DNA of 64,000 nucleotides from IMG/VR virus record IMGVR_UViG_3300028177_000001, positions 1-64,000 of that record; one strand, written 5' to 3'. Below the pieces are notes generated by a model, which saw only the letters and a program-made list of their open reading frames with translations, was not told where the DNA came from and ran no database searches. This document shows positions 6,607 through 62,836 of the stretch, one piece after another. A program made the translations under genes and the position numbers. Within the stretch, counting starts at the first letter, position 1, and each line of letters opens with the position of its first letter.

Positions 6607-6621
6607 ATAGGGAAGGAACCG
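6607..6621 (-). promoter_or_regulatory. putative late promoter variant (CGGTTC-N5-CTAT)
   Basis: Near-match to the recurrent CGGTRG-N5-CTAT motif, about 45 nt upstream of the 6561 start. Confidence 0.5.
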
Positions 6622-6636
6622 TCATGGTCCCCCTAC

Positions 6637-7446
6637 TCAGGGCAGGTTCGGGAACAGCACGATGTACCCCAGCAGGTAGAGCTTCTCTGTACCGTCGTTC
6701 ACGAAAGCCAGCCGGAAGTCGGTGCCTGACGTAACAAGGTCCGTTGCCTCGAGGTACTGGACCTCGAACCAACTCGCTCCGTCGTCCACGCTGGCGTAGA
6801 CAAGAAGTCCGGCAGGAGTGGGGAGCTGTTCTACCTGATCCTTGCGGACCGGGGTGTTGGTGTTTGCAGTGACGTTGTAGCCTTGCACCACATCTTCAGA
6901 TGTAGTCGCCGTGGCTACCTTCCACCAGACCAAAACCTCGTCAGTGCCGGGAGTGCCCGGATTGTACGAGGTGATGTCGATGGTGTCTGTGATAAGGGCA
7001 CCGTAGAGGTCGTTGGGACCCCCCGTGTTCGTCGGGAGCATCGCGATGCTTCCGGGAGCGATCCCTGCCGGGCCCCCTACTCGACCCACCTGGCAACGAG
7101 CGAAAGTGCCGGGGAGACCAGAGGGCACCGTCCCGGTAGTGATGTTTCCCGCTATGGGCAAGGGTGCCGCGTTCAGGTCCAGTGTCGACTGGTCCGCCGC
7201 TTCGAGAAAGAAGTTCGACAGCTGGTTGTCGTAGTTCGGATACCGCGCCAGAAAGGACGTCGCGATTTGAACGGGCAGGGACCCGCTGTTCTGCGGGGTG
7301 AGATACGAAGCGGAGTTGACGTCAAGAGACACCCCTGGCGGAGTGTTCAAGATGAACTTTCCGTTCACCAGCGTGGTGCCTCCCACAACGGGCTCGACGG
7401 AAGTTTCGAGAACGAGCCCTGATGCGAGACTGGAGATGATCTGCAT
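6637..7446 (-). CDS. virion structural protein (hypothetical)
   Basis: 269-aa ORF within the structural cluster, tightly spaced, T/G/P-rich. Confidence 0.65.
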   Translation of the reverse strand: MQIISSLASGLVLETSVEPVVGGTTLVNGKFILNTPPGVSLDVNSASYLTPQNSGSLPVQIATSFLARYPNYDNQLSNFFLEAADQSTLDLNAAPLPIAGNITTGTVPSGLPGTFARCQVGRVGGPAGIAPGSIAMLPTNTGGPNDLYGALITDTIDITSYNPGTPGTDEVLVWWKVATATTSEDVVQGYNVTANTNTPVRKDQVEQLPTPAGLLVYASVDDGASWFEVQYLEATDLVTSGTDFRLAFVNDGTEKLYLLGYIVLFPNLP

Positions 7447-7454
7447 GGTCTACA

Positions 7455-10400
7455 TCAGTCCTGGTTGTTGACGGTGGTGGAGTTGACGCCGAATGCAGCA
7501 GTGAAGCCACCCCCACCGTTGCCCCAATTGCCGGCGCCAGCTGCCGTGCGCTCCACGTTGCAGGAGCACTGACTATCATCGGGGATGAAGTTTGCTCCCG
7601 CAGTGGCCCCTGTGGTGGCTCCGTAGAACACGTTCCCCAAGAACACCATTGTGAATTGGGTGGCCGCGCCTCCCGCAGCATCGCAGTTCATGCTGAAGTC
7701 GGTCGCCCCGGCCAACCTGACTGTGTTGTTTGACACAGACATCGTGTGAACGGCGGCATTCGGGAGATCAATATCCAGGCCTGTCACCGACGCTGACCCG
7801 GAGCGGAGGACATTACCATCGATAGCGATAGTATCCGAGGTGTCGTCAGCCACGAACCAGACACCCTTCGTGGTGAAAGAATCAACTGTGTTCCCGCGGA
7901 TCGAAACCGTCTCCAAGCGGTCGTAACCCCTCAGGTAGACTCCCATCGTACAGTCAATGATCGTGTTGTCGGACAGAGAGATATTCTTGGAGAGCCCAGC
8001 CGCGACCTGGTTCCCTGACGCCAGAACACCGATGGCAACCCCCTCGCAGGTGTTGCCATCCAGCTTGGCCTGGGTCATATCTCCGGTGACCAGGACGTCA
8101 ACGCCGTTCGAGAACGCATCCCGCACTGTGTTGTTCTGAGCGACCAGAGTGTCCAGGGAATTAGACCCGGTCCCCGTTCCGCTGAGGGCTACTCGGACCC
8201 CGGCACCGCTGGTGGTAGTCCGGACGAGGTTGTCCGAGAGGACCCAGCCGCCGTAGCTCGAGGTCCCCGAATTGATTGAATTCGATGCCTCGACATAGAT
8301 TGCGTTGTTCTCGCTTCGGAGCACCGTGTTCCGGCAGATTGACAGATTCTGGACCGTGCCTTCCTGATTTAGGATGACATGGATCCCGTCACCGGAGGTT
8401 GCAGCTGTCACCGCCGAGTCATCCACCTGATTATCGAAGATCTGAGTGGATACCAGAGTGATGTCGCCCGTTCCAGCATCCAGGGCCTCAACCAGGATGC
8501 CTGCCTGGTCCGTAGGGGTTCCTGGACCCCCCAAGGCAATCTGGCAGGTCAGGCCAATCTTGTTGCGGCTCAGCTGCGTTGAGGTGAACCCACAGCCTCC
8601 TGAGAACTGGAGGCAGACACCGCTTCGACGAGTCCGGTAGACATTGTTGTCGCAGACCCTGGCCGAATTGATCTGGTTGGCGAAAGTGTCTGACCCCTGG
8701 GAAACCTCAACCCAGATTCCATACTCGCCGCCGTCGGAAACTCCAGAGAGACTGTCTCCCCAGTAGATTTGGTTCCCCGTGATGGCGTAGCCCTCGACGG
8801 TATGGTCGGCACCTGTGCCTACGGAATGGACTTCCGTGAAGATCCCGTAGGGGAGGGCAAACCCAGAACCGTGCACGTCGTTGGCAACCGTGTCTCGGAC
8901 GACGTTGTTCTCGATTCGAATGTCTCGGCAGTTTCGTGCGTAGATAGCGCGAGACTGAATATCAATGACGCCTCCGCCCCCGTTAGCCCAACCCTCAGTT
9001 CCGGCGTCGTTGATGCTCGCGCCGATCTTCACCAGGGTGTTGTTTGCTACCAGGGGGCTGTCGCAGAACTCCAGGCCGATTCCCTTGGAGCCGCGACCGA
9101 CGAAGGTATCGACCCAGCCAGAAATGTCCTGCGCCTGCGCGCAGTGGTGGATGTGGTTCCCTGTCACGCTGGCGTAGCGGACTGCATCCGCTACCTTGTC
9201 GCCCCTGAGGATCACACCACCGGCGCAGCGCCAGATCTCGTTGTCTGAGATATTGACGTACTCAGGCGTGCTGGTGTCGTTGGCTCCGACGTAGATGCCG
9301 TCTGCCGTCGGGGTGAAGATATTGGCAGCCAGACCGTTGTCGATGGAGTTGCCCGAAATGCTGATGTTCGAGACCGCCCCGAAGACGTACACCCCTTGAG
9401 TAACGCAACTCTTGAAAGAGTTGCCGGACACGACGATGTCGTGGGTGAAGGTCGTGGCTCCTGTCAGACCCAGGACCTGAACACCCTTTCCTGTGTTCTC
9501 AAAGATGTTGCCCGAGACAACCATTGCCTGGCTGCCTGCGGCAACAGCCACCCCGATGCCGCAGTTCTGGATGGTGCTTCCCTTGACAGAAGAGAACCCC
9601 ATCTGAGCAGGGAAGGCGACCCCGTTCCCGCTCGCTCCGTTCACGAAACCGAGGATGACGCAGTTGGAGACGTGAGACGGGACCGTTCCGGCCAGGAAGT
9701 CGACCCCGACGGGGACCTCTCCCGACCAAGAGCTCCGGTTGCATGTGATGTAGCAATCTGAGACCAGCGTGGAGCCAGAGGTCCGAATCCCTGTTGTGCC
9801 CGTAGTGGCGTCCACGAGGATTGTGCACCCTACGACCTTCACCTGGCCGCCCAGACTGGTCAGAGCGACATCCGCACCCTGCAGCGTGGAGCCTCGGACG
9901 GAGCAACCGTCCCCCGCCACGACAACACCTTCGGCGAACCCTGAAACGCGGGAGTTCACAATGTGGGTGTCGCCCTCTCCGGCAAAGGGTCCCGATGCGT
10001 TCAGTCGGATTCCGTAAGTCCCCGCAGTGCCCTGCTCGGTGCACACCACCCCGTAGAGGACCGTGTCCTGGGGACGGTCGATGAAGATGCCCACCCCTGT
10101 GGCGTCCACGGACGTGTTCTTGATGGTGGCTCGGTTGTATCCACTCGCCCAAGAGAGGTTGATGGCTGTGACCCACTCCTGGGCTCCCCCGGTGAAGACG
10201 CAGTCCTCTACCTGAAGGTCGCGCACAGTGGCTGCGCTACCCTCAAGGGCTGTGGATCCTGTGTGCTCACACTGGAATGTGATCTTGTGGAACTGAGTTC
10301 CCGTTCGACCCGCCAGGTTGAACATCGGCGCCAGCGTAGCCCCGGTGACGAAGGCAGAGTCCTTCCCGTCTCCGACGAATCGGATGCCGTCAATGGGGAT

Positions 10401-11123
10401 AGTGGCCGTGGCCGCGATGGTGATGTTCCCCCGGACCACAATGGTCTGGGTCTCCGCCTGCGAGGCGTTGGCAGGGCTGTAGGTCTGGAGGTACAGCAAG
10501 GCTGCCTCCAGAGTCATAAAGCAACCCTCGGCGTTGGCGTTGGTCGCGGCGTCGGAGTTACGAAGCGTGAGGGGGCACTTCCGGTCCAGCTGCGGCACGA
10601 AGAACCGAGCGTCCTGACTGGTCCCCGTGTTGATAGTTCCAGCGACTGCCACTACCCGGCTGATCAGGACTGGCTCGCCTGCGAGGGCTGGAGGGCTTCC
10701 GCTCGAAGCCAGGTTCCCAGTTGCTGGATCTACGTAGACCCAGCGTGTCCCGTCAGCCAAAGCGATGGTCAAGCCAGTCACCGTGACCAGGCTGGCGCCG
10801 ATGATGACCTGAGTGGCATCCATCGTGAGGACGTTGCCCATCGAAGTCCAGGTACCACCGGAAACCACGCCGTTGGTCCGACCGGCGGAAAGACCGCCTC
10901 CGAGTTCCTGGAGTGCTCCCTCCACCTCGTCCGCTGTGAAGTAGTTGGCGGCGTCCGTGATACGAATCGCCACCGCCATGTGGGCCTGGGAGGGATCCTT
11001 GACGTGTGCCTTGAGAGAAAGGGTGTCCCGGTCCGGGTTTCGGAGTGCTGTGTCGTCGACCGACTTCGGGGCTGCAGCGCCCACTCCGACCGTGATGCCT
11101 GCCGGATCTACATTACGAGGCAT
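7455..11123 (-). CDS. right-handed parallel beta-helix tailspike / receptor-binding protein
   Basis: Many PbH1-type repeats (ISGNxF, ISDNEI, VTGNHI, ITGNQI, IDGNVL) with Asn/Cys ladders, behind an N-terminal virion-attachment-like region. Confidence 0.8.
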   Translation of the reverse strand: MPRNVDPAGITVGVGAAAPKSVDDTALRNPDRDTLSLKAHVKDPSQAHMAVAIRITDAANYFTADEVEGALQELGGGLSAGRTNGVVSGGTWTSMGNVLTMDATQVIIGASLVTVTGLTIALADGTRWVYVDPATGNLASSGSPPALAGEPVLISRVVAVAGTINTGTSQDARFFVPQLDRKCPLTLRNSDAATNANAEGCFMTLEAALLYLQTYSPANASQAETQTIVVRGNITIAATATIPIDGIRFVGDGKDSAFVTGATLAPMFNLAGRTGTQFHKITFQCEHTGSTALEGSAATVRDLQVEDCVFTGGAQEWVTAINLSWASGYNRATIKNTSVDATGVGIFIDRPQDTVLYGVVCTEQGTAGTYGIRLNASGPFAGEGDTHIVNSRVSGFAEGVVVAGDGCSVRGSTLQGADVALTSLGGQVKVVGCTILVDATTGTTGIRTSGSTLVSDCYITCNRSSWSGEVPVGVDFLAGTVPSHVSNCVILGFVNGASGNGVAFPAQMGFSSVKGSTIQNCGIGVAVAAGSQAMVVSGNIFENTGKGVQVLGLTGATTFTHDIVVSGNSFKSCVTQGVYVFGAVSNISISGNSIDNGLAANIFTPTADGIYVGANDTSTPEYVNISDNEIWRCAGGVILRGDKVADAVRYASVTGNHIHHCAQAQDISGWVDTFVGRGSKGIGLEFCDSPLVANNTLVKIGASINDAGTEGWANGGGGVIDIQSRAIYARNCRDIRIENNVVRDTVANDVHGSGFALPYGIFTEVHSVGTGADHTVEGYAITGNQIYWGDSLSGVSDGGEYGIWVEVSQGSDTFANQINSARVCDNNVYRTRRSGVCLQFSGGCGFTSTQLSRNKIGLTCQIALGGPGTPTDQAGILVEALDAGTGDITLVSTQIFDNQVDDSAVTAATSGDGIHVILNQEGTVQNLSICRNTVLRSENNAIYVEASNSINSGTSSYGGWVLSDNLVRTTTSGAGVRVALSGTGTGSNSLDTLVAQNNTVRDAFSNGVDVLVTGDMTQAKLDGNTCEGVAIGVLASGNQVAAGLSKNISLSDNTIIDCTMGVYLRGYDRLETVSIRGNTVDSFTTKGVWFVADDTSDTIAIDGNVLRSGSASVTGLDIDLPNAAVHTMSVSNNTVRLAGATDFSMNCDAAGGAATQFTMVFLGNVFYGATTGATAGANFIPDDSQCSCNVERTAAGAGNWGNGGGGFTAAFGVNSTTVNNQD

Positions 11124-11129
11124 GGGGGA

Positions 11130-14100
11130 TCACTCCGAAGCCAGAAGAAGGATGCCACGGGTGCGGTAGACAGCTGCGCAAGTGTCGTTGCTCGTATCTA
11201 CGAACCGCACCGTGTTGTCGGCGTCCAGAATAGCGAAGCGGCTCACCACTACCAGGAGGACCTCATCCTTTCGGTACAGGACAGTGTCCGCAGAAGCGCG
11301 AGCCAGGAAGGGGAACCACACCTTGTGCGCGGACACTCCCGAGAGAGGCTGGGCCATCGCCGTGGGGCGATACGTGCTCGTGTCCGACACCTTGTATGCG
11401 ACCCGAAACTCTGAATCCACGTCCAGGCTTGAGAAGGCGAAGTCCTGGTTTCCATGAGCCGGAACCATCTGGTGCAAACTCAACAGGCCAGTAGCGGCGG
11501 AGAAGTCCCCGACTGAAATCCGGGCGCTTCCTGCAATGACCCATTCGGCTGTGAAGGGTGAAGTGCTCAGGTCGCCGTTCACGGCAATCTGATCCAGAGG
11601 GTTGGTGTACGGGAAGGGTGCGTCCACGCTTCCCGCGCTCATGGTACCGGTCCAGAGCTCCCTGGACATCACCAAGGGCTTGACGGTCAAAGTCGAGGGC
11701 AGCGGCACTGTGCCGGGGGCTCCCGCTTGCACACCCAGAGTCTGCGGGGCGTCGGTGCGGTAGTAGCAGGCAATCTGGTAACCCACTGCACCCCAGTTGG
11801 GCAAGGGGTCCTGAGCGAAGTAGTCAATGCTCACCAGGGTCTGACCCGCTCCGGAGAACGGAGACCCACCCTGCACCACCAGCAACCTCTGACTGGACCC
11901 GTAGGTCGTAGCAGCGGTGTTCACTGGGCGAGTAAGCGTGCTCACTGTATCGGTGACCGTCACTGTGGTAGTCGCCGACCCGTAGATGCGTCGAGGGAGA
12001 GTCACCAGCAAAGGAGAGTCACTCACCACAGTTTCGGTGATGGGAGTGCCCGAACCCGCACCAGAACCATCATTGGCGGCATACTCCACGCCGAGCTCTC
12101 GGAATCCAGTTCGGATCTGAGGCTGGAGCAAAACCTCCCAGTCGTCCGGTCGCTGTGCTGTGTCGTTTTCGAGCACGGGTCCGTTCCCGTACACTGCTGC
12201 AGCCGGGACTACCTCCACGCTCGGAGTGTCTGTGGTGCCCGACCCCGCAGGGTAGGTGATCTCGAGCTCGATGAAGATGCGTCGGGGAGAGTTGTTGTCC
12301 CCAGCGGCAGCCACTCCCACCAGGTCATAGGCAGCGACAGAGATGCCCCCGGTGGCCTGGACGTTGTTTCGCCCGAGAGTGATCTCTACAAGAGGGGTGC
12401 CAATCCCCTCCACCTTGTCGATCTGGCACGTCTTGCTCACGGATCCGGAGTAGTTGCCGTCGTCGTGGATGACGCGCAGGACATCTGTCACCTTGGTGCC
12501 CAGAGGCCACAAGTTCGAGACCCCGCCCCCGCCCGTGGGCGTGCCGGAGGGAGCGTTGGCCCATCCTCCGAGACCGGTGGCATCCAGAGCGTCCAGGTCA
12601 ATGCTGATGACATCCCCGGCTTCCCAGGTGGTGTAGCCTCCGGTGGACTTGGTCACGTACTTGCCAGGCTGCGCGCCGATCAAGTCCGTGGGCAGGATGG
12701 GGAAGATGCGCCGTTCGACCACAGGCCAGTCAGCGAACCGACGACGAACGTGATCGAAGTCGCCGATCTGGTCCCCTCGGTTCGTAGACCCGCTGGTGGG
12801 CGGCGTGCCCCCCTTGGACCCGGACCGGCCGATCTCATTACAGACCAGGAACTGGGTTCCCACGTCTCCGGTTCCGCCGCCGAGCTGGTTCTTGTCTGAT
12901 GCGTCAAGAGCCCAGGTGGCGAAGTTCCCGTCCATGAGCGCGGTCATCTGACGCTCAAGCTCGGCCTTCATGTCGATTCCGCCGGGAGACACCTGACGCC
13001 GAAGGTCCAGAAGATCCGCCACGAGGATCTGGTCGTGGTATCGTCCGTCCGGTCGGTCGGAGGTATTCGCCGGGATCGCTCCGACCAGAGGGTTAGTGAA
13101 CCCCCCGTGGGTCTGCGGAAGTGCGCCGTTGGTGTTGGTCAGAGGACTCCAGCCCGCGCCAGCGCCGCTGTTGTACGAGTCGTTGCGACGGAAAGCGAAG
13201 GCAATCGGGATGGCGTAGACGTAGCCGTCCACTGTGCCCAGGGCCGTTGCCGCCGTGGAGCTCCCGTCTCCTGCAATCCAGAGCCCGGCGTCTACCGTGT
13301 CGTATGCCACCGCGCTGGAGTTGCTTAGAACCGTCGCGCCGTCCGCCTTTACAAAGGGGTAGCCTGCCACAGCAGCGCTCTGCACTCCCTGAGCAGTGAC
13401 GTTCGAGTTGGAGAACCCGTCTTGCGTCTTGAAGTTCACCGCCTCCGACTGGCCCGTGGTGCGAATCCGATACTGGACCTGGACCCGCTTGGTGGACTCC
13501 GTGCCGATGGTGGGGTCCGCGATGTCGTCGGCGAGGTTCACTCCGGCAGGGGCTTGCACGTTTCCGTGGCGGTACAGTGTTGCCTGGGTCGGCTTGTTCC
13601 CTGTGTCCGAACCTCCCGAGAAGGTAGTCGGCCCTGCGCCCCCGTTGACCTGGATGCAACCACCCGTGCCCAGAGTGAGGGTCAGCGTGATTGCGTTGCC
13701 CGCGACCCCGGCCAGGGCGTCCGCAGCCTTGAGGTTCACCAGCGCGGAGTTCGAAACATCCACGGCAGCGGTGCAGATGCTCGTGAAGCTGTTGGTGCCC
13801 AGGTTGATGGCCGCCGCGATAGCAGCGGCGGTCGCATTGCCGTTCGCCCCGATCACGAACTCATCGGCTACAGCCGGTCCTGGAGAGACAGCCGTGAGGG
13901 GAGTGCCGTTGATGGTGATGATGTCGCCGGCAGTCACGTTTGCGTTCGTGATTATCTCAGTGGTGGCAGAAGCCCTGGGGCTGGTAGACACTACGCAACG
14001 CCAGACCTCGAGAAAGACGAAGTCGGTCCGCTTGACGTCGGGAGGGGATCCCCCGAACACTGGAGCCGCGTCGAGAGTGATGTCGCACTGCCCAGCGGTA

Positions 14101-14458: not shown

Positions 14459-14641
14459 TCATAGTCGTACCCGACGTCCCACGCGGAGTCGCTGGTGGGC
14501 AGGAGTCCGCTGAACATCAGCTGGCCCTTTCGAGGCTTCGGTGGATAGGGAGTGCACCGGGGACGTGCCCGGTCTCGGGGTCTTCTGGGGTGTTGAACGA
14601 GCAACCTGGGGTCGGGCCTTCTTTCTGCATGAGCATCCCAT
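14459..14641 (-). CDS. small basic protein starting MGCSCRKK
   Basis: GGAGG RBS 4 nt before ATG; first gene after the late-type motif at 14665-14679. Confidence 0.5.
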   Translation of the reverse strand: MGCSCRKKARPQVARSTPQKTPRPGTSPVHSLSTEASKGPADVQRTPAHQRLRVGRRVRL

Positions 14642-14664: not shown

Positions 14665-14679
14665 ATAGCTGATCTACCG
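14665..14679 (-). promoter_or_regulatory. putative late promoter CGGTAG-N5-CTAT
   Basis: Exact consensus match heading the structural operon. Confidence 0.65.
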
Positions 14680-14680
14680 G

Positions 14681-14710
14681 AGGGGTTCCCGGAACTTCCG
14701 ACCGACGTAA
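14681..14710 (+). promoter_or_regulatory. putative early/middle promoter GGTTCCC-N13-GACGTAA
   Basis: aggggttccc-N13-gacgtaa, 16 nt upstream of the 14727 ATG. Confidence 0.65.
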
Positions 14711-22204: not shown

Positions 22205-22219
22205 ATAGTCTCGATACCG
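22205..22219 (-). promoter_or_regulatory. putative late promoter variant (CGGTAT-N5-CTAT)
   Basis: Near-match to the consensus, 26 nt upstream of the start. Confidence 0.55.
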
Positions 22220-34335: not shown

Positions 34336-34370
34336 GTAGAACCTCCGCCCCGAGGCGAATGATAGCTTCT

Positions 34371-34619
34371 CTACTGAGTCTCGTAGATCTGACGCTTTAG
34401 GTCGCGCACGGTCTGGGCGTAGGACAGAGCAGGCACCTTCGCTCTATCAGAGAAGTATTGGTCTTTGAGGGACCGCATCGCCGGACCGCCTTGCCCTTCG
34501 AAGACAAAGGTGACCTGCTTCCCTTCTCGTTCCAGGTGCAGCAACGGAACCGCCGCGACCTTGAGATACGCAGCGAAGTAGAGGTCGCTGGTCCTGTATT
34601 GGGAGAACGGTTCGTCCAT
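34371..34619 (-). CDS. DUF5659-like small protein
   Basis: YRTSDLYFAAYL...LEREGKQVTFVFE pattern. Confidence 0.6.
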   Translation of the reverse strand: MDEPFSQYRTSDLYFAAYLKVAAVPLLHLEREGKQVTFVFEGQGGPAMRSLKDQYFSDRAKVPALSYAQTVRDLKRQIYETQ

Positions 34620-35403: not shown

Positions 35404-35471
35404 GATGGTGCTCCTGAAGAGTGAATGGGACGGACCCTACTAAGAAGAAGTCGTATCGGCTTTCTACCGGA

Positions 35472-36155: not shown

Positions 36156-37162
36156 GAACGACTCCTATCAACGAGAGAGAAGTTCATAGCTGACCCACCG
36201 GGATTCTCAGCCGAATACCGAGCAGCCACCCTCCGCGAAGATGCAGACTTGAGAGACCGTGGAAACACATCCACGATGCCCGTGACCGTCAAGCCCTGCA
36301 CTCGCTGAACCGGCCCCTTCTTGATGAGATCGTTGGAATACTTCGGACCCACCCCGTCGTCAACAGAAAGTGTGAGGTGGGGGGTGCCCGCTTCAGCCTT
36401 CAAAGGGCGCTGAAGGTCTACCTGCAACACCTGACCATTGCTGTCCTCGGCGTACCCCACGACCTGCGCCGAACCCCGCTGACCCACCAAAGCAACCAGA
36501 GGGGAGTTCTTGTCCCGGCTCAAGGTGATGTGGTCCCCGTGCGCTTTGTGGTGCGTGTAAGGCCAGCGCTCCGTGACCGCCGCCCGAGAACGGGCATCCA
36601 GGAACAAGGCCAGGTAGCTGAACCGGTCTGGAAGAGGTGAAGTCTCGGTTGATTCTCCGCATTCCGGGGTCTGAGGCTTGGCGCGAACCAGCTGCGTGAA
36701 AACACGGCTGGGGTCGATCCCCATGAGGTCCGCGACCCTCTCAAACTCCTTCAGATGCGAAGGCCGGTCGTCCCACACCCGAATCGTGTCGATGTGAGGG
36801 TAGCGTGACAAGAACTTCGCGATCAGCTTCTTCTTCCAGGACAGCGTTCCGCTCGGGGGCGCCAGGTGTACCTCGTCGAAGTTGAGTCCCTTCTGCTTGA
36901 GAAGCTCGGGCACTCTGTACCGGAGCCCAGACTGCGCCGGGCGTCCCGTGGTCATGACCGCGTACACGTCAGAGTTAGAGATCGACTGCTTGGCCTTCGA
37001 TACAGTGGGGCCCACCCACCAGGAGGAGTCAGGGCGCTCGGGCACGCAAGGCGGAATCAGCGACTCTACGTTGTTCCACCACCCGTTTCCGCCCCACGTC
37101 GCAGGAGGGAAGGGAGAACGGAACAGTGTTCCATCGAAGTCGTAGAAGTGGAGCTCGGCCAT
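36152..37162 (-). CDS. HAD phosphatase (Swiss-army-knife RNA-repair type) fused to a 2H cyclic phosphodiesterase
   Basis: FYDFDGTLFRSP, MTTGR, WDDR (HAD motifs); DHITL and PHLTLS (paired HxT); C-terminal tag SSRRVAARY. Confidence 0.75.
   Translation of the reverse strand: MAELHFYDFDGTLFRSPFPPATWGGNGWWNNVESLIPPCVPERPDSSWWVGPTVSKAKQSISNSDVYAVMTTGRPAQSGLRYRVPELLKQKGLNFDEVHLAPPSGTLSWKKKLIAKFLSRYPHIDTIRVWDDRPSHLKEFERVADLMGIDPSRVFTQLVRAKPQTPECGESTETSPLPDRFSYLALFLDARSRAAVTERWPYTHHKAHGDHITLSRDKNSPLVALVGQRGSAQVVGYAEDSNGQVLQVDLQRPLKAEAGTPHLTLSVDDGVGPKYSNDLIKKGPVQRVQGLTVTGIVDVFPRSLKSASSRRVAARYSAENPGGSAMNFSLVDRSRS
36186..36200 (-). promoter_or_regulatory. putative late promoter CGGTGG-N5-CTAT
   Basis: Exact consensus match 30 nt upstream of the 36155 start. 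Confidence 0.6.
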
Positions 37163-37303
37163 ATACCCCTTTCCGGGTATATGGGCTCTACCTAAGCATC
37201 CGGCGGAGGTCGCCCCTCTTGATGCGCCGCCAGACCCGGACGGTGACCACGTAGCCGCAGAACAGAAGCATGCCCGTTAGCACGGCTCCGGCAGCCAGGG
37301 TTC

Positions 37304-42542: not shown

Positions 42543-42557
42543 ATAGGCCCTGTACCG
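42543..42557 (-). promoter_or_regulatory. putative late promoter variant CGGTAC-N5-CTAT
   Basis: Heads the 42502-to-37304 tagged-protein operon. Confidence 0.55.
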
Positions 42558-48675: not shown

Positions 48676-48724
48676 GAGATTCTCCTATGTAGGGGAACCT
48701 GGGATATACTCTCTACCGGGACCC

Positions 48725-50862: not shown

Positions 50863-51135
50863 TTAGAACAGCCGACGGAACTCAGGAGGGAGCCGTCCGC
50901 GTCCAAGATCCCGCTCTACGTCATCGCGGAAATCCTGTGCTTCTGCCTCTACGTCATGCATAACAGGAACCTTGAGTTCTTCCTGTACACCGCCACCCTC
51001 AGCGTCCCAAAGCTCCAGGATGACCGTCATTCCACGCTGGGTCTCCTCAATCCGTAGGACGGCCGAGATGAACTCGGTTCCGTTCAAAGTCTCCGAGGGG
51101 ACGTCGAGACCCTTCCCCGGCCATAGCCGCCCCAC
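50863..51135 (-). CDS. small hypothetical protein (start uncertain, possibly 51030)
   Basis: Acidic ORF; a late-type motif at 51123-51137 overlaps the predicted GTG, so the real start is probably downstream. Confidence 0.45.
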   Translation of the reverse strand: MGRLWPGKGLDVPSETLNGTEFISAVLRIEETQRGMTVILELWDAEGGGVQEELKVPVMHDVEAEAQDFRDDVERDLGRGRLPPEFRRLF

Positions 51136-51271
51136 CGGGTCAGGGGATAGCCGCAGATCTCAGGGGCATCTCCGAGATGAACTCTGAGGTGAGGGCTTCC
51201 ATGAGGGGAACTCCAAGCAGGGCTCTACTGGAGTACCCGAAGCCTCGGACCACTTTGACCTCGTTGGTCTC

Positions 51272-51718: not shown

Positions 51719-51743
51719 GATGCGGAGACTCCGTAGAAGGTAG

Positions 51744-51814
51744 GTAGCTCTACCGTGAGATAGTAGCTCTACCGTGGGATAGTAGCTCTACCGTGAGATA
51801 GTAGCTCTACCGTG
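51744..51814. repeat. 19-bp tandem repeat x4 (GTAGCTCTACCGTG-RGATA) = tandem late-promoter motifs
   Basis: Cores at 51744, 51763, 51782 and 51801; on the minus strand three read CGGTAG-AGCTA-CTAT. Confidence 0.9.
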
Positions 51815-52808: not shown

Positions 52809-52823
52809 ATAGTAAACCTACCG
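52809..52823 (-). promoter_or_regulatory. putative late promoter CGGTAG-N5-CTAT
   Basis: Exact consensus match. Confidence 0.6.
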
Positions 52824-53547: not shown

Positions 53548-53562
53548 ATAGCGACACTACCG
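53548..53562 (-). promoter_or_regulatory. putative late promoter CGGTAG-N5-CTAT
   Basis: Exact consensus match. Confidence 0.6.
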
Positions 53563-56260: not shown

Positions 56261-56268
56261 AAGATTTC

Positions 56269-57438: not shown

Positions 57439-60400
57439 CCGTTGTTACCACGGGGTTCATAATAGCCAGGCCACCGCTCAGGATAAACTCGGTGCCAGGG
57501 TAGGGTGCGCCCCCAGCGAGCAGGCTTCGAACACTCAAAGCTGTCAGCCCTCCCCAGGGACCGAGCTTTGAATACGTCGTGGTCGCGTAGGCTGTCATCT
57601 CGTAAGCAGCCGCGCCGTTTCCCGTAGTCCCTGGAGTCCCATTCGGAACCAGAGTCCCAGACACCGCAGAGGGAGGGACGTTGTCGCTGAGCGTGCCCGG
57701 AATGTTCAGGTTCTCTGCGCGAGGGGTCACATCCGCCAGGACCATACGGAAGTCCTGGTTCATTCCCATCCCGCCTGGCGGCACCGCCCCGTCCGGGCCA
57801 CGAGCATTCGGGTAAGCGATCGCCGTGCCCAACAGGCCGTCCGTGAGACCGCCTCCCGAGGCCATGAGGATGCTGGTGGGGGCAAAGTGAGAAGCCGAAC
57901 CCTTGATGGTGGGGGACTGCTTACCCCAGGTGCCTCCAGGCCCTCCTGGAACAGAGTGCGCGTCTGTGGTGAACAGTCCGGCGATGCCGATCTCTGAAAG
58001 TCCTTCTCCCGGGCCAGGCCCGTCACACAAGCTGGAAAGGTGAACGCTGTCCCCGTCCTCCTTCTCGCAGAACTCCAGGCTCCCATACAGAGCATCTGCT
58101 CCGTCTGCGAACTCCACGAACCGATACGGATCGTTCAGCACCAGAGCTTCAGCGTCGTCCAGGATATCCAGAGGATCGTTGATCTTGGATCCCGCGAAGA
58201 CCGACGAGGTGGACGCAGCGTCCCGGCTCTTCGGAATCGGCGGGGTGCCCTCGTTGAGGATAGTGACCGAGTCGTCGATCGGCTGAGTGCACAAGTAGGT
58301 CTTGGAGACCGGGCGACCGGGAGCGAACGTCACCGTGACGGGATACTGCGCGGCTGGGAGAGCTGTCGAGAAGATCAGGTTCTGGCTGTCCGAGTCAAAC
58401 CCGTAGGTGGTGGACGCCACCGTTGCCCCGTCTACCTGCACCACGAACACCCGGCTGGCATACATGGCGGAGTCGGGGATGTAGACCAGAGTTGAAGTTC
58501 GGGAGGTAATCGTGGACACGGTCGGGGTCGTGTCCGACAGGAGCTCACCCGAGGTAACAGTGTACGAACGGTTTAGAACCATGCCTTGAGGCGCGATTCC
58601 GAACCCGTCAACGGCCCCTCTGATGCGATAGCGCATGAAGTCCCAGCGTTGCTGAGTGACAGCGCGGGGGTCCGGGGCTCCAAAGTGGACCGTTCCCCTG
58701 TCCTGCTTCAAGACAGGGAGAGCGGAATACTCAACAGTGGCCCATGCAGCAGAAGGGTCAGTCGTCTCGGTGGCGAAGTCCCCAGTGGCCGTCGGAGGCA
58801 AGGCCAGATCCGGACGGAACAGACACACCCCCCAGGTGGGGTCCAGGTACAGACGCACGTGGACAAGGCTCTGCCAGTCCATTTGCACAGGGATCGCTGT
58901 AAGGGACGAGTTCAACGCCCCACTTGAGTCCGCCCTGGGAATCTTGTACGAATCGATGTCGTCGGGAGTGCCCGCGCCGTCCCTTGTGAGGATACCGAAC
59001 GTTCGACCCAGAGTAGACCCAGCCAGGGCCAGTGGGCGAAGAGGAACCGCGCTCGTAGAGTGCAAGGTGAAGGCGCAGACCCCGGTTCCCTCGGCCCCGA
59101 CAAACCCTCGGGCCGAACCTGTGAAGGACACGAAGCCCGAGAACGCTGTGCTGCCCACCACCGTGTCATCTACAGACAGCACTACGATGTCAGCTACCGG
59201 GTCGCAGACCAGACGGTAGGTGTGAACAGCCAGGTCGTTCCAAACATGCGCAATCGTAGCGACTGTGTCTCGGTTGTTGTCTACCAGGAGGATGCTGTCC
59301 GTGGTCAGTAGCAGCCCCACTGTTCGAACTGTCGGAGCCAGGGCGGCTGTGGGGACCTGGGCCCCGAAGAGGAAGCCCACCCCCAGAGTGCCCACGGTGC
59401 CAGACTCCACCGAGAGACGGGCTTCAGAAATCAAGCCCTCGTAGTTGGCAGTGGTAGGGACAGCGAGATCCCGATACCAGGTGCCTTCCTCAGTTGCTGT
59501 CTTCGTGTACTCCAGAGTCTGACCCCGCACAAAGGCAGCAGCCAGGGTCGACGATGGAGAAGACAGCCAGCCTGCGTCAACGGGAGCCTGCAGCCCAGAC
59601 AACGAGACCTGGGGCAAGTCAGTAACCAGGTTCCTTGCTGTCGCAGACTGAGAGTACAGCAAGGTGGCCAGCCGGGCTTCCCGAGTGGCATCCCGCACTA
59701 CGACATGGGCGTCGCCTGCGCCCAGCATGCCGGACTCAACCTTGAACTTCGCTTCCGTGTCCGTAGTGACGCGGTTGGTCAGGTACGGCTCCACGCGGTG
59801 GTAGCTGAACTCCTGGTCAATGGAAGCGTCGGAGGAGCCGGATGTAGACTTGAGAAGAACCGAGCTCCCCGAAGCATCAGTCTGGGAATACCCCAGACCC
59901 CCCACGATGTACCAGGGATCGTTCGGGTCCTCCTCGGGAACGACGTTCATCTCGCTGAAGGCAGTGATGCCCTGCACAGAGAAGGTCATACGCAAGGGGT
60001 TCGAGGCATACTGAGAAAGATCCCAGATGGTCGAGTTGGTCGCCCTACGAGAGACCGAGCCCCAGAAGGCGACTCCCTTCTCGGTTGCGGGAAGTAGCAG
60101 GGCGGTCTGGGCTGGGTAGGGCGCCAGCTTGGCCACGGTGACGACCGTGCCCGCGACTGCACCCCCCATAATCAGAGTTGCGGAGCCTGCGGGGAACTCC
60201 ACGGCCCCTCGCAGAGAAACCAGGTTGGTCTCCCAGAGTGTCTCGAACAAAACTGTGAAGGTGTCGTTGCCGTATCCCTTGTAGTCCGCAGGCAAGGCGG
60301 GGGTGAAGGTCACGGCGACTGTGGTGCCGTCCGTCGACGCAGTCAACCCACAGGAGGCGATCGTGTAGACACCCGCCTGATTGCCCGAGGCTACCCGGAA

Positions 60401-62794
60401 ACGACTGCCTGCCAGAACTCCCGGAGGCAAGGCCGAGGTGTCCAAGGTCAACGTGGTTGACGAAGTCGCGGTGCCCAGCGCTGAAGGACCGATTTCCCAG
60501 CTGGCTTCCAGATGCGGGTTGTTCCCGTCTTTCAGCACGCCGATGTGCTGAACCCCGGACACCAGCAACGCCCCGACCAGGAAGAGGAAGTTCCCGTCGT
60601 GTACGCCGAAGCCTACTCCAGTAAACACTCCGTCCAGGACATAGCTCTCAAGGTAGAACCTGCCCGATGAAGTGACCGATGTCTGCAGAGACAGGTCCAG
60701 GTCCCGCTTGTATGCTGCAGCGGTTCCAGTCTCGTAAGGGCCAGAAGACGCATCGATAACACGGTAGGTGCCGTCCCCTACCAGACCTCCCGTGTCCACC
60801 CCGGACAGCGTCCAGGGAGTGTCCGCGTCGGCAGGCAGGACACCCCCGTTGAAAATGCCCGTCTGCTGAAGAGAGTCAGCAGACACTCCTCCGATGGACA
60901 CAGCCGTAGGGTCCTGGTTGAGCAGGAGCGTAGTGGGCTGGTTCAGCAGGGCGGAGTAGCCCTTCTGGAACCCGATGTACCGGTGCCCGATCCTCTTGGG
61001 GGACTGCCTGGTGAGGGGGCCCAGCGCGATCCCCTGGGGGAATCGGTTCGTCTTAGTAGCCCCTGTGGCTGTAGAGGGCGTGGGGGAAACAGCACCTGGA
61101 GTATGCCCCACAGACCTGTCCCAGGTGTTGAGAGACAGACCTCGGGTGTTGAGACCGGCCATTCCGAATGCCGGGTTCGAGATCCAGGTGTAGTCAGCGA
61201 CGACAGTGACGGTTCCGGGGGCCGTGCGTGGGATCGGGATGGTGGGATAGATCTCCCCCACATAGGGATTCACTCCAGACACAGCCACTGCAGTACCGTC
61301 TACTCGTACAGCCACATCCTCCTTGCCCGCTGGGGTTGCGTCTCCCCAGCCGCGCACCAGGGGTCCCCTCTTGGTGAAGATTGTCGCCTGCGCCAGAACA
61401 CTACTGCCTGTGAACGAAACAGCGAGTCCGTGGATGAAGTTCCAGGCACTGGTGAACAGAGTAGAGGACGCCGAGAGGCCCATTCCCTTCAAGGCGAACA
61501 GGCTTACTGCAGGAGGAGTAGAAAGAACAACCGCTGTCCCCGCGTTGTATGTGGATGAACCGGTCGCAGAAGCGATAGAGAAGGTGAGAAGCGGAGTCCC
61601 GTTCAAGAGGACTGAGTAGAAGCTCCCCTTCTGATTGCGAACCAAGGACACTACTGCGTCGGCAGTATCCCACGCAGCCGGAGCTTGCAGGGAGAGCGCC
61701 CCGCTCGTGACGCTAATGACCTTGGTGCCTGCCACATCCTCCAGGAGAAGGTTGACCTGGGTTGCGCCGTCTGAGATAGCGAACAGAACCAGGCTGGAGT
61801 TGAACAGGGCCGGGACAATGGAAGCCCCTACCGAGCTGAACGTGAAGTCTGCCCTGTAGGAGGACCCGGGAAGCATTCGGCCTGCCGTATCCTCAAACGT
61901 CCATCCGTAGGACGTGCCTGCTGCCTTCGATAGAATCAAGCCCGACGCCGAAGCTACTGAAGTGCCCGTTCCGACAACCGTGCCCGTGAAGGTAGGGTCC
62001 GCAGACGGCAGCACTGAGCCGTCGTAGTCGTACGAGAGAGCAGGGCCGACTGTGAGGTTGTATGTTGCGGACGTCATCGGGTGGACGTCCAGATCCACCC
62101 TGGACTTCAAGACCGCGCTCTGAGACGCTGACACCAGGCTGGGGGCCACTGGGTAGGTCGTCGTCACAGCATAGGAGGCAGTGCTGTTCACACCCGGACT
62201 AAACCCAGCCTCCGTGAGGAGAGTTTGAGCCAGGCTCCGAGAGTCCTTGAAGTCCAGGCGAACCGTGCGACCGTCATCCGGGCTCGGAAGCGAAACAGTG
62301 ACAGTAGTGGTGTCGCCGTAGCTGGAGAAGGTGGCCGGGCTCGGGGAGATTTCGTTCCCTGCCAGGTCCTCCACTGATGACACAGTGGCCTGGTACTGCC
62401 CTCCCAGAGAAGATCCGGAGTGCGTGACAATGACAGAGGTGTAGCCCCCGTAGGAACCCGCTGTGCCCAGAGCTACCGATACCGTCGTGAGAGGGGCACC
62501 GTACACTGCTGTAAAGAGGTAGTTCCCCGCGAGGACGAGAGCGGCGTTGCTCCGCATCTCCTCGCTAAAGAACACCTCGACCCGGAAGCCGTCCAGGGAG
62601 CTCGCCCCTGTCACCTTCGGGGGGATGACATCCAGCGAGCCGTAGGAGTTCACCCCAAAGCCCGAACCGCCGAAACCTCCAGTCGTTGCGAATGGGAGTC
62701 TCGGAAACGCAGACGAGCCGTAGGCCGAGTGGCCGTAGGCAGCGCCTCCGTATCCGAGGCCACCCAACGTCAGTCCCGGAAGATATACCGGCAT
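57416..62794 (-). CDS. very large virion structural protein (baseplate/tail), 1792 aa
   Basis: Ig-like N-terminal repeats and repeated HTYRL/LamG-like beta segments; late motif at 62822-62836. Confidence 0.7.
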   Translation of the reverse strand: MPVYLPGLTLGGLGYGGAAYGHSAYGSSAFPRLPFATTGGFGGSGFGVNSYGSLDVIPPKVTGASSLDGFRVEVFFSEEMRSNAALVLAGNYLFTAVYGAPLTTVSVALGTAGSYGGYTSVIVTHSGSSLGGQYQATVSSVEDLAGNEISPSPATFSSYGDTTTVTVSLPSPDDGRTVRLDFKDSRSLAQTLLTEAGFSPGVNSTASYAVTTTYPVAPSLVSASQSAVLKSRVDLDVHPMTSATYNLTVGPALSYDYDGSVLPSADPTFTGTVVGTGTSVASASGLILSKAAGTSYGWTFEDTAGRMLPGSSYRADFTFSSVGASIVPALFNSSLVLFAISDGATQVNLLLEDVAGTKVISVTSGALSLQAPAAWDTADAVVSLVRNQKGSFYSVLLNGTPLLTFSIASATGSSTYNAGTAVVLSTPPAVSLFALKGMGLSASSTLFTSAWNFIHGLAVSFTGSSVLAQATIFTKRGPLVRGWGDATPAGKEDVAVRVDGTAVAVSGVNPYVGEIYPTIPIPRTAPGTVTVVADYTWISNPAFGMAGLNTRGLSLNTWDRSVGHTPGAVSPTPSTATGATKTNRFPQGIALGPLTRQSPKRIGHRYIGFQKGYSALLNQPTTLLLNQDPTAVSIGGVSADSLQQTGIFNGGVLPADADTPWTLSGVDTGGLVGDGTYRVIDASSGPYETGTAAAYKRDLDLSLQTSVTSSGRFYLESYVLDGVFTGVGFGVHDGNFLFLVGALLVSGVQHIGVLKDGNNPHLEASWEIGPSALGTATSSTTLTLDTSALPPGVLAGSRFRVASGNQAGVYTIASCGLTASTDGTTVAVTFTPALPADYKGYGNDTFTVLFETLWETNLVSLRGAVEFPAGSATLIMGGAVAGTVVTVAKLAPYPAQTALLLPATEKGVAFWGSVSRRATNSTIWDLSQYASNPLRMTFSVQGITAFSEMNVVPEEDPNDPWYIVGGLGYSQTDASGSSVLLKSTSGSSDASIDQEFSYHRVEPYLTNRVTTDTEAKFKVESGMLGAGDAHVVVRDATREARLATLLYSQSATARNLVTDLPQVSLSGLQAPVDAGWLSSPSSTLAAAFVRGQTLEYTKTATEEGTWYRDLAVPTTANYEGLISEARLSVESGTVGTLGVGFLFGAQVPTAALAPTVRTVGLLLTTDSILLVDNNRDTVATIAHVWNDLAVHTYRLVCDPVADIVVLSVDDTVVGSTAFSGFVSFTGSARGFVGAEGTGVCAFTLHSTSAVPLRPLALAGSTLGRTFGILTRDGAGTPDDIDSYKIPRADSSGALNSSLTAIPVQMDWQSLVHVRLYLDPTWGVCLFRPDLALPPTATGDFATETTDPSAAWATVEYSALPVLKQDRGTVHFGAPDPRAVTQQRWDFMRYRIRGAVDGFGIAPQGMVLNRSYTVTSGELLSDTTPTVSTITSRTSTLVYIPDSAMYASRVFVVQVDGATVASTTYGFDSDSQNLIFSTALPAAQYPVTVTFAPGRPVSKTYLCTQPIDDSVTILNEGTPPIPKSRDAASTSSVFAGSKINDPLDILDDAEALVLNDPYRFVEFADGADALYGSLEFCEKEDGDSVHLSSLCDGPGPGEGLSEIGIAGLFTTDAHSVPGGPGGTWGKQSPTIKGSASHFAPTSILMASGGGLTDGLLGTAIAYPNARGPDGAVPPGGMGMNQDFRMVLADVTPRAENLNIPGTLSDNVPPSAVSGTLVPNGTPGTTGNGAAAYEMTAYATTTYSKLGPWGGLTALSVRSLLAGGAPYPGTEFILSGGLAIMNPVVTTGVIQAAN
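57462..57476 (-). promoter_or_regulatory. putative late promoter CGGTGG-N5-CTAT
   Basis: Exact consensus match inside the 3' end of the upstream CDS. Confidence 0.55.
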
Positions 62795-62821
62795 TCAGCT
62801 CTCCCTGAGCTATCGAAGCGA

Positions 62822-62836
62822 ATAGGGGAGCCACCG
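62822..62836 (-). promoter_or_regulatory. putative late promoter CGGTGG-N5-CTAT
   Basis: Exact consensus match 27 nt upstream of the 62794 start. Confidence 0.6.

What the first reader, a model, noticed from the sequence alone, without database searches (positions are those of the whole stretch)
6607..62836. Novel late-promoter motif CGGTRG-N5-CTAT
Exact matches, all on the minus strand: 14665, 36186, 51123, 51760/51779/51798, 52809, 53548, 57462 and 62822. Variants: 6607, 22205, 34362, 35455, 37179, 42543 and 48702. Almost all lie 20-55 nt upstream of structural or tagged genes. My rough estimate at 64% GC is about 0.2 exact hits by chance over both strands. The motif does not resemble sigma70 (TTGACA/TATAAT) or T4 late (TATAAATA) promoters. 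Inference: it is recognised by a phage-encoded sigma factor or RNA polymerase.
Basis: partly seen in the sequence, partly recalled or inferred. Interest (0 to 1): 0.68.

Follow-up and report, generated by a model that had tools for sequence, protein, structure and literature searches.

The report
Conserved late-type promoter motif, marine huge phage
A 15-base DNA word, CGGTRG-N5-CTAT, sits just upstream of dozens of genes, mostly virion genes, in an uncultured marine giant phage and its relatives. It is very probably one of two phage-specific promoter classes, but the protein that reads it was not found and no transcript start could be measured.

Summary

- **Counts.** CGGTRG-N5-CTAT occurs 10 times in the window, all on the minus strand, against 0.15 expected. 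It occurs 21 times in the whole 288-kb phage contig.
- **Placement.** 19 of the 21 sites lie in the 10.5% of the genome that is intergenic. Each points at a co-oriented gene, with the start codon usually 24-45 nt downstream.
- **Conservation.** Three related IMG/VR phage contigs carry 6, 27 and 19 exact copies, against 0 for a reversed-pattern control, with the same geometry. Orthologous genes keep the motif while the flanking DNA has diverged.

I found a second, mutually exclusive class, GGTTCC-N16-CGTA. It precedes small genes, the topoisomerase genes and one tRNA.

A promoter is the best reading, probably a late one.

"Read by a phage sigma or RNA polymerase" is unproven. The contig encodes one sigma, of the housekeeping type, whose −35-contact residues do not suggest this motif. 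I found no RNA polymerase, sigma54 or gp55 homologue. No RNA data exist. The block layout (hexamer, N5, tetramer, one helical turn apart) and the inferred distance to the start site resemble sigma54 promoters more than −35/−10 promoters.

The parts
14665..14679 (-). Exact motif CGGTAGATCAGCTAT, 247 nt upstream of the 1095-aa gene 11130-14417, in a 309-nt divergent intergenic region
14545..14559 (-).
36186..36200 (-). Exact motif, 30 nt upstream of gene 35472-36155. It lies inside the 3' end of gene 36152-37162. The orthologues in G006 and G007 also carry it.
51123..51137 (-). Exact motif, 92 nt upstream of the small ORF 50863-51030
51741..51812 (-). Tandem array with a 19-nt period: three exact copies (51760, 51779, 51798) plus one degenerate copy (51741), 41-79 nt upstream of the tagged gene 51272-51718
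52809..52823 (-). Exact motif, 27 nt upstream of gene 52164-52781, which carries the 33-aa tag at residues 97-129
53548..53562 (-). Exact motif, 27 nt upstream of the ATG at 53520 (213-aa gene, phrog_5417). The G001 orthologue has a one-mismatch copy.
57462..57476 (-). Exact motif inside the 3' end of the 1792-aa gene, 23-59 nt upstream of gene 57100-57402/57438
62822..62836 (-). Exact motif, 27 nt upstream of the 1792-aa gene 57416-62794
6607..6621 (-). Two-mismatch variant CGGTTCCTTCCCTAT, 45 nt upstream of the 1788-aa gene 1195-6561. The G001 orthologue has a one-mismatch copy.
22205..22219 (-). One-mismatch variant CGGTATCGAGACTAT, 26 nt upstream of gene 21534-22178
34362..34376 (-). One-mismatch variant CAGTAGAGAAGCTAT, 26 nt upstream of gene 33439-34335. 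The G006 orthologue has an exact copy.
35455..35469 (-). One-mismatch variant CGGTAGAAAGCCGAT, 51 nt upstream of gene 34723-35403
37179..37193 (-). Two-mismatch variant AGGTAGAGCCCATAT, 16 nt upstream of gene 36152-37162 (a weak candidate)
42543..42557 (-). One-mismatch variant CGGTACAGGGCCTAT, 40 nt upstream of gene 40850-42502, at a divergent junction. The G001 orthologue has a one-mismatch copy.
48704..48718 (-). One-mismatch variant CGGTAGAGAGTATAT, 28 nt upstream of the tagged gene 47893-48675.

Best explanation
CGGTRG-N5-CTAT is the core of one of two phage-specific promoter classes in a clade of uncultured marine huge phages. The pooled consensus is CGGTAG-nSnBY-CTAT.

This class ('class B') drives the virion/late genes and a family of 'tagged' genes. 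The other class ('class A', GGTTCC-N16-CGTA) drives small early/middle-type genes, the topoisomerase operon and a tRNA.

The most likely mechanism is host core RNA polymerase redirected by a phage-encoded specificity factor. That factor would read two short blocks on one face of the helix, with block centres 10 bp apart, and needs no −35 element. Transcription would start within about 14 nt downstream of CTAT, giving very short leaders.

Shown here: enrichment, placement, orientation, conservation and class exclusivity.

Inferred: that it is a promoter, that it is late, and where the start site lies.

Not identified: the factor.
For: 1. **Enrichment.** 10 exact sites against 0.15 expected in the window; 21 genome-wide.

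2. **Placement.** 19 of 21 exact and 23 of 32 one-mismatch sites are intergenic, where 10.5% of the genome is intergenic (binomial p = 4e-17). All point at a co-oriented gene, and CTAT is most often 24-45 nt from the start codon.

3. **Relatives.** G001, G006 and G007 carry 6, 27 and 19 exact sites against 0 for the reversed-pattern control. 6/6, 25/27 and 17/19 of these are intergenic.

4. **Orthologue footprints.** Across orthologue pairs the motif is present in both members in 20 pairs, only in G000 in 16, only in the relative in 20, and in neither in 135 (odds ratio 8.4, p = 2e-7). No pair swaps between class A and class B. The flanks and the N5 spacer diverge while the two blocks stay.

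5. **Divergent junctions.** By my count from the map, 13 of 38 G000 sites stand in front of genes whose upstream neighbour is on the other strand. The 84-nt divergent region 255856-255939 consists of little more than two back-to-back motif copies, 24 and 32 nt from the two start codons.

6. **Distance to the SD.** The SD never begins closer than 14 nt after CTAT and piles up at 14-18 nt (about 70 sites in three genomes). The class A bound is 7 nt after ACGTAA, as expected for a −10 hexamer.

7. **Gene content.** Class B sits in the module holding the terminase, portal, prohead protease, major capsid protein, a beta-helix protein and giant virion proteins. In G006 and G007 an exact copy precedes the first gene of the head operon. 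Class A precedes a tRNA gene, so at least that class acts on transcription.

8. **No competing signals.** There are no canonical sigma70 promoters or intrinsic terminators to explain expression.
Against: - There are no transcript 5' ends. All 14 public runs that hold this DNA are DNA metagenomes kept as contigs.
- No recognisable −10 element or A/T-rich melting region lies between CTAT and the SD. That stretch is G+C-rich.
- The reading factor is unidentified.
  - The only sigma on the contig is SigA/RpoS-like, with canonical −35-contact residues.
  - The unrelated phages carrying the nearest sigma homologues lack the motif.
- Some sites are not independent, because they precede paralogous 'tagged' genes.
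- Not every site precedes a structural gene. One precedes a GIY-YIG endonuclease-like gene and several precede small ORFs inside the tRNA region.
- Gene calls are my own simple codon-usage caller, so individual distances can be off.
Confidence: 0.68

Rival explanations
1. It is the binding site of a phage DNA-binding regulator, either an activator or a 'stoperator'-type repressor, rather than the promoter core. The real promoter would be elsewhere or poorly conserved.
For: - The motif is quasi-palindromic: RTAG-N5-CTAY, with both half-sites on one face of the helix.
- Four tandem copies 19 bp apart and palindromic back-to-back copies look like arrays of protein-binding sites.
- The phage encodes possible regulators. 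These are two response regulators, one with an unassigned ~95-aa C-terminal part, plus a histidine kinase, and a borderline Ros/MucR-like zinc finger fused to an AAA domain.
- Mycobacteriophage L5 stoperators are likewise asymmetric, numerous and oriented with transcription (from my own knowledge, not tested here).
Against: - No other conserved element that could be the promoter exists in these short intergenic regions within 45 nt upstream or 60 nt downstream of the motif.
- The 84-nt divergent region leaves no room for one.
- The motif keeps a sharp minimal distance to the SD, like class A.
- It is exclusive with class A and absent from class A regions, which fits a promoter class better than a global repressor.
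Confidence: 0.14
2. It acts in the RNA. It would be a 5'-UTR element such as an endonuclease processing site, a binding site for a translational activator or repressor, or a small hairpin.
For: - The strand-specific position in the leader region is equally expected for an RNA element.
- RNAalifold draws a 4-pair mini-stem, G3·U15, U4-A14, R5-U13 and G6-C12. The A/G choice at position 5 keeps pairing, as A-U or G·U.
Against: - The stem is worth only −0.95 kcal/mol and shows no compensatory change.
- Position 6 varies (A, C or T in 19 of 87 sites) while its partner C12 stays fixed.
- 13 sites are at divergent junctions with no upstream transcript to process.
- In the 84-nt divergent region the two copies overlap back to back, so each would have to lie upstream of its own promoter.
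Confidence: 0.08
3. It is the promoter of a phage-encoded RNA polymerase, either T7-like single-subunit or phiKZ-like multisubunit, encoded in the unsequenced ~21% of the genome.
For: - The motif has the size of a single-subunit polymerase promoter (15-17 bp, compact). It ends in CTAT, as T7 and SP6 promoters end in CTATA just before +1 (from my own knowledge).
- CheckV rates the contig 79% complete.
Against: - PF00940 finds T7 RNA polymerase in a positive control but nothing in G000, G001, G006, G007, G008 or the 485-kb relative LR745208.1.
- PF00623 and PF00562 find nothing in G000, and PF00623 finds nothing in LR745208.1.
- No predicted protein carries a DxDGD catalytic motif.
- The degenerate N5 spacer and the sharp 14-nt minimal distance to the SD do not fit a start site directly after CTAT.
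Confidence: 0.07

Closest known systems
T4-type late promoters (TATAAATA, read by gp55/gp33 with the sliding clamp)
   Same: Both are compact, phage-specific elements without a −35 box, placed a few tens of nt upstream of late/virion genes, with very short leaders. The phage shares T4-like replication genes: topoisomerase II, a UvsX-like recombinase and a Dda-like helicase.
   Different: The sequence is unrelated. Here there are two blocks separated by 5 variable bases, the surroundings are G+C-rich, and the motif probably lies further from the start site. No gp55 homologue was found (phrog_234 and phrog_12791; phmmer).
Sigma54 −24/−12 promoters (TGGCAC-N5-TTGC)
   Same: The layout is identical: hexamer, N5, tetramer, with GG at positions 2-3 and the two blocks one helical turn apart. 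The SD distance bound, compared with class A, puts the 3' block about 13 nt upstream of the start, as for the −12 element (by inference). There is no −35 or −10 box.
   Different: The near-invariant GC of the −12 element is AT here. No sigma54 DNA-binding or core-binding domain was found. The only sigma54-activator-like hit is a sub-threshold generic AAA match.
T7/SP6-type single-subunit RNA polymerase promoters
   Same: Similar length, high copy number and strict orientation. The CTAT resembles the CTATA at −5 to −1.
   Different: No RNA polymerase gene was found although the positive control worked. The centre of the motif is degenerate. The 14-nt minimal gap to the SD argues for a start site further downstream.
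Mycobacteriophage L5 stoperators (about 13-bp asymmetric repressor sites, GGTGG...)
   Same: Asymmetric, dozens of copies, intergenic, and oriented with transcription.
   Different: This motif keeps a fixed distance to start codons, is restricted to one gene class, and alternates with a second motif class. The resemblance is from my own knowledge and was not tested here.
ECF-sigma promoters (GGAAC-N16/17-CGT)
   Same: This applies to the second class found here, GGTTCC-N16-CGTA. It has a rigid 16-nt spacer, a CGTA '−10', and a start about 7 nt downstream.
   Different: The −35 word is GGTTCC, not GGAAC. G000 shows no ECF sigma. The relative G001 has a sub-threshold sigma70_r2 match (E 0.003) in a 306-aa protein that looks ECF-like by eye.

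Membership tests
Sigma70-type −35/−10 promoter | Two hexamers resembling TTGACA and TATAAT, 16-18 bp apart | tested here: not met
   The blocks are only 5 bp apart. Nothing is conserved within 45 nt upstream. No T is conserved at the −7 equivalent. Canonical promoters are not enriched anywhere in the genome.
Sigma54 −24/−12 promoter | GG and GC dinucleotides exactly 10 bp apart within TGGCAC-N5-TTGC | tested here: not met
   GG is present in more than 94% of 87 sites, but the GC position is A-T in more than 96%. The layout matches; the sequence does not.
Sigma54 −24/−12 promoter | A sigma54 (RpoN) and an AAA+ enhancer-binding protein are available | tested here: inconclusive
   The phage contigs have no PF04552 or PF04963 match and only a sub-threshold PF00158 hit. 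The host is unknown and could supply them.
T4-type late promoter | A/T-rich octamer TATAAATA at −13 to −6, and a gp55 homologue | tested here: not met
   The motif sequence differs. No gp55-like protein was found. TATAAT does not occur at all in the genome.
Single-subunit (T7-like) RNA polymerase promoter | The phage encodes a PF00940 polymerase | tested here: not met
   There is no match in G000, four related fragments or LR745208.1, while T7 itself scores E 1e-109. Caveat: G000 is about 79% complete.
Phage-specific promoter class (generic) | Over-represented, intergenic, co-oriented with genes, at a fixed short distance upstream of start codons | tested here: met
Phage-specific promoter class (generic) | Conserved at orthologous genes in related phages | tested here: met
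   (odds ratio 8.4, p = 2e-7).
Phage-specific promoter class (generic) | Transcripts start at a fixed distance downstream | not testable with these tools
   No RNA runs hold this sequence.
Structured RNA element | Base pairs supported by compensatory changes | tested here: not met
   Only a 4-pair mini-stem, −0.95 kcal/mol, with 0 compensatory pairs.

The most novel reading that the evidence does not exclude
Class B is a −24/−12-style promoter, with two short blocks one helical turn apart that end about 13 nt upstream of the start and no −10 or −35 box. It would be read by bacterial core RNA polymerase with a phage factor unrelated to sigma54. That would be a new mode of promoter recognition, used for late genes by a clade of marine huge phages whose DNA probably carries hypermodified thymidine.
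Probability: 0.15. Interest if true: 0.8.

Novelty: new variant of a known kind. Interest (0 to 1): 0.55.

Why it matters
Huge uncultured phages are known almost only from DNA sequence, and how they time their gene expression is essentially unknown.

Here the sequence alone gives a two-class promoter map. Without any culture, it sorts roughly 80 transcription units into 'virion/late' and 'early/middle' sets. The map is conserved across several marine phage contigs.

The late-class motif has an architecture that fits none of the standard sigma70, T4-late or T7 models, and no known reader is encoded nearby. It therefore points to an unidentified specificity factor.

In practical terms, the two motifs can be used to:
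- annotate start codons, operons and temporal classes in this clade;
- provide defined DNA baits for finding the factor.

Tried and rejected
- **RNA evidence.** The single run search found only DNA metagenome contigs, so read laying was not used and no start site could be tested.
- **Near-identity to known phages.** None was found.
- **Phage RNA polymerases.** PF00940, PF00623, PF00562 and a DxDGD motif scan were all negative. T7 served as a positive control.
- **Sigma54 and its activators.** Negative.
- **T4 gp55-like sigma.** Negative.
- **A second sigma in G000, by phmmer.** None.
- **ECF-like protein of relative G001.**
  - It is 306 aa, with a sub-threshold Sigma70_r2 match and motifs that look like regions 2 and 4 by eye.
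  - It has a homologue in LR745208.1 but none in G000, G006 or G007, and no PDB sequence match.
  - It remains a lead only.
- **A weak Sigma70_r2 hit in G006.** It lies on the non-coding strand of another gene and was discarded.
- **The distant relative LR745208.1.** It is 485 kb with terminase 54% identical, and has only 3 exact sites against 1 control. The motif is therefore specific to the closer sub-clade, or has drifted.
- **Functional annotation of downstream genes.** Most have no Pfam or PHROG match, so 'structural' rests on the module context and a few anchors.
- **ESM Atlas look-ups.** For two neighbours of the portal gene they gave only leads, beta-helix/tail-fibre-like and tail-terminator-like.
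- **Literature.** A search on the motif word returned only primer sequences. A search on huge phages and sigma factors found nothing on this motif.
- **Hairpin or RNA reading.** No support.

Full report
**What the window is**

The window is the first 64 kb of a single 288,255-bp viral contig with 62% G+C (IMG/VR record). CheckV rates it 79% complete and it shows no terminal repeats. It has no near-identical relative among deposited phages.
- Its topoisomerase II subunit is about 50% identical to those of metagenomic huge phages of 460-640 kb.
- Its terminase is 54% identical to that of LR745208.1 (485 kb) and 28% identical to that of a 309-kb Tunturiibacter (Acidobacteriota) jumbo phage.
- The DNA is found in marine and seawater metagenomes from 11 studies.
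- I called genes with a simple self-trained codon-usage caller: 366 genes, 89.5% coding. Distances to start codons depend on those calls.

**The observation**

- CGGTRG-N5-CTAT occurs 10 times in the window, all on the minus strand, against 0.15 expected from shuffles.
One further one-mismatch site, 14545, was missed.
- Three of the exact hits belong to a 19-nt tandem array of 3.7 copies at 51744-51814.
- Genome-wide there are 21 exact sites, 15 on the minus strand and 6 on the plus strand. 19 of them lie in the 10.5% of the genome that is intergenic (p = 4e-17). Every intergenic site has a co-oriented gene downstream.
- With one mismatch allowed there are 32 more sites. 23 are intergenic and have the same geometry.
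- Nothing is conserved outside the 15 bases, from 45 nt upstream to 60 nt downstream, apart from the Shine-Dalgarno (SD) region.
- Pooled over 87 sites from four genomes the consensus is CGGT(A>G)G-n(G/C)n(G/C/T)(C/T)-CTAT, followed by G+C-rich sequence.

**Conservation in relatives**

Terminase and a neighbouring gene led to related IMG/VR contigs.

| Contig | Size | Terminase identity | Exact sites | Reversed-pattern control | Exact sites that are intergenic |
|---|---|---|---|---|---|
| G001 | 181 kb | 64% | 6 | 0 | 6/6 |
| G006 | 141 kb | 73% | 27 | 0 | 25/27 |
| G007 | 113 kb | 72% | 19 | 0 | 17/19 |
| G008 | 159 kb | 68% | 4 | 1 | not analysed |

Counts are; intergenic fractions use my own gene calls. 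Nearly all intergenic sites are within 100 nt upstream of a co-oriented start.

Among reciprocal-best-hit orthologues, with median protein identity of 45-52%, the motif is kept at the same gene far more often than chance allows. It is present in both members in 20 pairs, only in G000 in 16, only in the relative in 20, and in neither in 135 (odds ratio 8.4, p = 2e-7). No gene switches between this motif and the second class described below. Aligned upstream regions show the two blocks conserved while the flanks and the N5 spacer differ.

Other contigs:
- The more distant LR745208.1 is not enriched, with 3 sites against 1 control.
- Three unrelated phages that carry the nearest homologues of the sigma factor have 0-1 sites.

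**A second promoter class**

K-mer enrichment in upstream regions revealed a more classical bipartite element.
- In G000 it reads gGGGTTCCC-N13-gACGTAAc, that is GGTTCC-N16-CGTA, with a rigid spacer. There are 33 intergenic co-oriented sites.
- In G001 it reads gGGGGGTTCC-N15-cCGTA(G/T/A)AG.
- It has the geometry of an ECF-sigma promoter.
- It precedes small genes at 160-270 kb, the plus-strand topoisomerase cluster in the window (sites at 14684, 23018, 27581, 28511 and 31334), and the tRNA gene at 20066-20142. At least this class therefore acts on transcription, not translation.
- Classes A and B occupy different gene sets (map).

Class B is concentrated at 1-117 kb. That region holds:
- the large terminase (92451-94394);
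- the portal (89818-91527);
- a prohead-protease-like gene (70425-71930);
- the major capsid protein (67490-68362, phrog_2522, E 4e-52);
- a 2100-aa virion-protein-like gene;
- a beta-helix protein (7455-11123);
- two unannotated proteins of about 1790 aa.

Further points on gene content:
- ESM Atlas look-ups for two neighbours of the portal gene point to tail-fibre-like and tail-terminator-like proteins, as leads only.
- In G006 and G007 an exact copy stands 69-70 nt upstream of the first gene of the head operon. G000 has a two-mismatch copy at the same distance.
- The replication and nucleotide-metabolism block at about 117-160 kb carries neither motif.

This pattern is what one expects of a late class, but timing was not measured.

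**Why a promoter rather than another kind of site**

- By my count from the map, thirteen G000 sites precede genes whose upstream neighbour is on the opposite strand, so read-through cannot supply their transcripts.
- The 84-nt divergent region between genes 255046-255855 and 255940-256596 consists of two overlapping back-to-back copies around the palindrome GCTCTACCGGTAGAGC. They lie 24 and 32 nt from the two start codons, and there is no room for anything else.
- The SD begins no closer than 14 nt after CTAT and piles up at 14-18 nt in G000, G006 and G007. The analogous bound for class A is 7 nt after ACGTAA, which is just where a start site lies after a −10 hexamer. The SD must be transcribed, so the class B start lies within 14 nt of CTAT. 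If both classes favour minimal leaders, it lies about 13 nt downstream.
- An RNA structure is not supported. RNAalifold finds only a 4-pair mini-stem worth −0.95 kcal/mol with no compensatory change.
- Canonical sigma70 promoters and intrinsic terminators are not enriched.

**Architecture**

The two blocks are 5 bp apart, with centres 10 bp apart, so they lie on one face of the helix.
- This is not a −35/−10 arrangement.
- It is the layout of sigma54 promoters (TGGCAC-N5-TTGC), including the GG, and the inferred distance to the start agrees. But the GC of the −12 element is replaced by AT.
- Two alternative readings cannot be excluded without 5'-end data:
  - CTAT as the upstream half of a −10 element, T-12 A-11 T-10;
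  - CGGTAG as an extended-−10-like block, with CTAT at the start site.
- The 5' block (cgGTAg) shares a GTA core with the class A '−10' (aCGTAa, or cCGTAg in G001).

**Who reads it**

G000 encodes one sigma70-family protein of up to 334 aa at 180502-181506.
- It has regions 1.2, 2, 3 and 4.
- Its best PDB matches are SigA and RpoS (E 1e-44 to 1e-40).
- Reading the alignment against E. coli numbering from my own knowledge, it keeps the −35-contact residues (RERxRQ) and Q437, but has H for T440 and Y for H455.
- That profile predicts something close to a housekeeping promoter, and the phage genome lacks such promoters. Its target is therefore unclear, and nothing links it to class B.

Searches for other readers were negative:
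- No T7-like polymerase, with T7 as a positive control.
- No multisubunit polymerase domains and no catalytic DxDGD motif.
- No sigma54 or enhancer-binding protein.
- No gp55 homologue.

The relative G001 has a 306-aa protein with a sub-threshold sigma70_r2 match. By eye it shows region-2-like and region-4-like segments. It has a homologue in LR745208.1 but none in G000's 288 kb.

Other conceivable DNA-binding candidates are listed under things noticed. The most likely mechanism is therefore an inference: host core polymerase plus an unidentified phage specificity factor.

**Verdict**

The promoter reading is well supported by indirect evidence and the 'late' label by association. The claimed reader (a phage sigma or polymerase) is not established. 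The motif is a new variant of a familiar kind of element, the phage-specific promoter class, with an unusual architecture that would be worth an experiment.

Noticed in passing
window 14684-14710(+), 20156-20182(-), 23018-23043(+), 27581-27607(+), 28511-28537(+), 31334-31360(+); about 33 sites genome-wide: A second promoter class, GGTTCC-N16-CGTA (gGGGTTCCC-N13-gACGTAAc), with ECF-like geometry and a rigid spacer. It lies 16-30 nt upstream of start codons and is conserved in relative G001 as gGGGGGTTCC-N15-cCGTAnAG.
   Followed up: yes
window 20066-20142(-): A tRNA-like gene with an unassigned anticodon ('ta' at position 35), 14 nt downstream of a class A promoter.
   Followed up: partly
G000 214-272 kb (outside the window): 42 further tRNA genes, all on the minus strand, covering nearly all amino acids. 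Small plus-strand genes, each with its own CGGTRG-N5-CTAT copy, are interspersed among them.
   Followed up: partly
window 51272-51718, 47893-48675, 52164-52781; G000 101828, 144370, 217936, 255940, 257088, 272847: A 33-aa peptide, LTASDRSSLIKLAxSLEKGSxERKAILAGLK (69-94% identical), is shared by at least 9 otherwise unrelated genes. It is usually at the N-terminus and is internal (residues 97-129) in 52164-52781. It may be a targeting or packaging tag.
   Followed up: partly
G000 about 144-214 kb (exact genes not located), plus the ThyA-like gene at 154080-155834: Genes of a thymidine-hypermodification pathway: a 5-hmdU DNA kinase helical domain (PF18723, E 4e-89), DUF3228, a glutamine-synthetase-like enzyme, a PLP enzyme, dUTPase/dCTP-deaminase and a 584-aa thymidylate-synthase-like protein. 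The virion DNA probably carries modified T, which could bear on how T-containing promoter words are read.
   Followed up: no
G000 191261-194271(-): A phage-encoded two-component system: a histidine kinase (192753-193853), a stand-alone receiver (193846-194271), a 214-aa response regulator with an unassigned C-terminal part of about 95 aa (192116-192760), and a third partial receiver.
   Followed up: partly
G000 190740-191000(+): A tandem array of about nine units built on GAGACACTGGGCGTAGACGTGGG, in a 669-nt intergenic region between divergent genes. It looks like iterons, so it may be a replication origin or a regulatory region.
   Followed up: no
G000 185949-190525(-): A protein with a borderline Ros/MucR-like zinc finger (25.2 bits against a 25.4-bit cut-off) fused to an AAA_5 ATPase, close to a VWA/CobT-like protein. 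Both are driven by class A promoters and both are conserved in G001.
   Followed up: no
whole G000: A/T-only hexamers are strongly avoided. TATAAT occurs 0 times against 27 expected, and all A/T-only hexamers together occur 44 times against 865 expected under base independence.
   Followed up: no
G000 181974-182550 (L001:2480-3070, minus strand): A long non-coding stretch upstream of the DUF3307 and sigma genes. It contains the duplicated words TCTCTTTTCGTAAAGGG and TGTAAAA, and neither promoter class.
   Followed up: no
window 42628-44994(+): A 788-aa gene with the strongest codon bias in the genome (GC3 0.90) and no Pfam match. In G001 the corresponding position holds the ECF-like sigma candidate.
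   Followed up: no
window 36152-37162(-), 38932-40407(-): A HAD domain of the 'Swiss Army Knife' RNA-repair type (PF10307, E 3e-20), and a 491-aa GNAT-domain protein.
   Followed up: no
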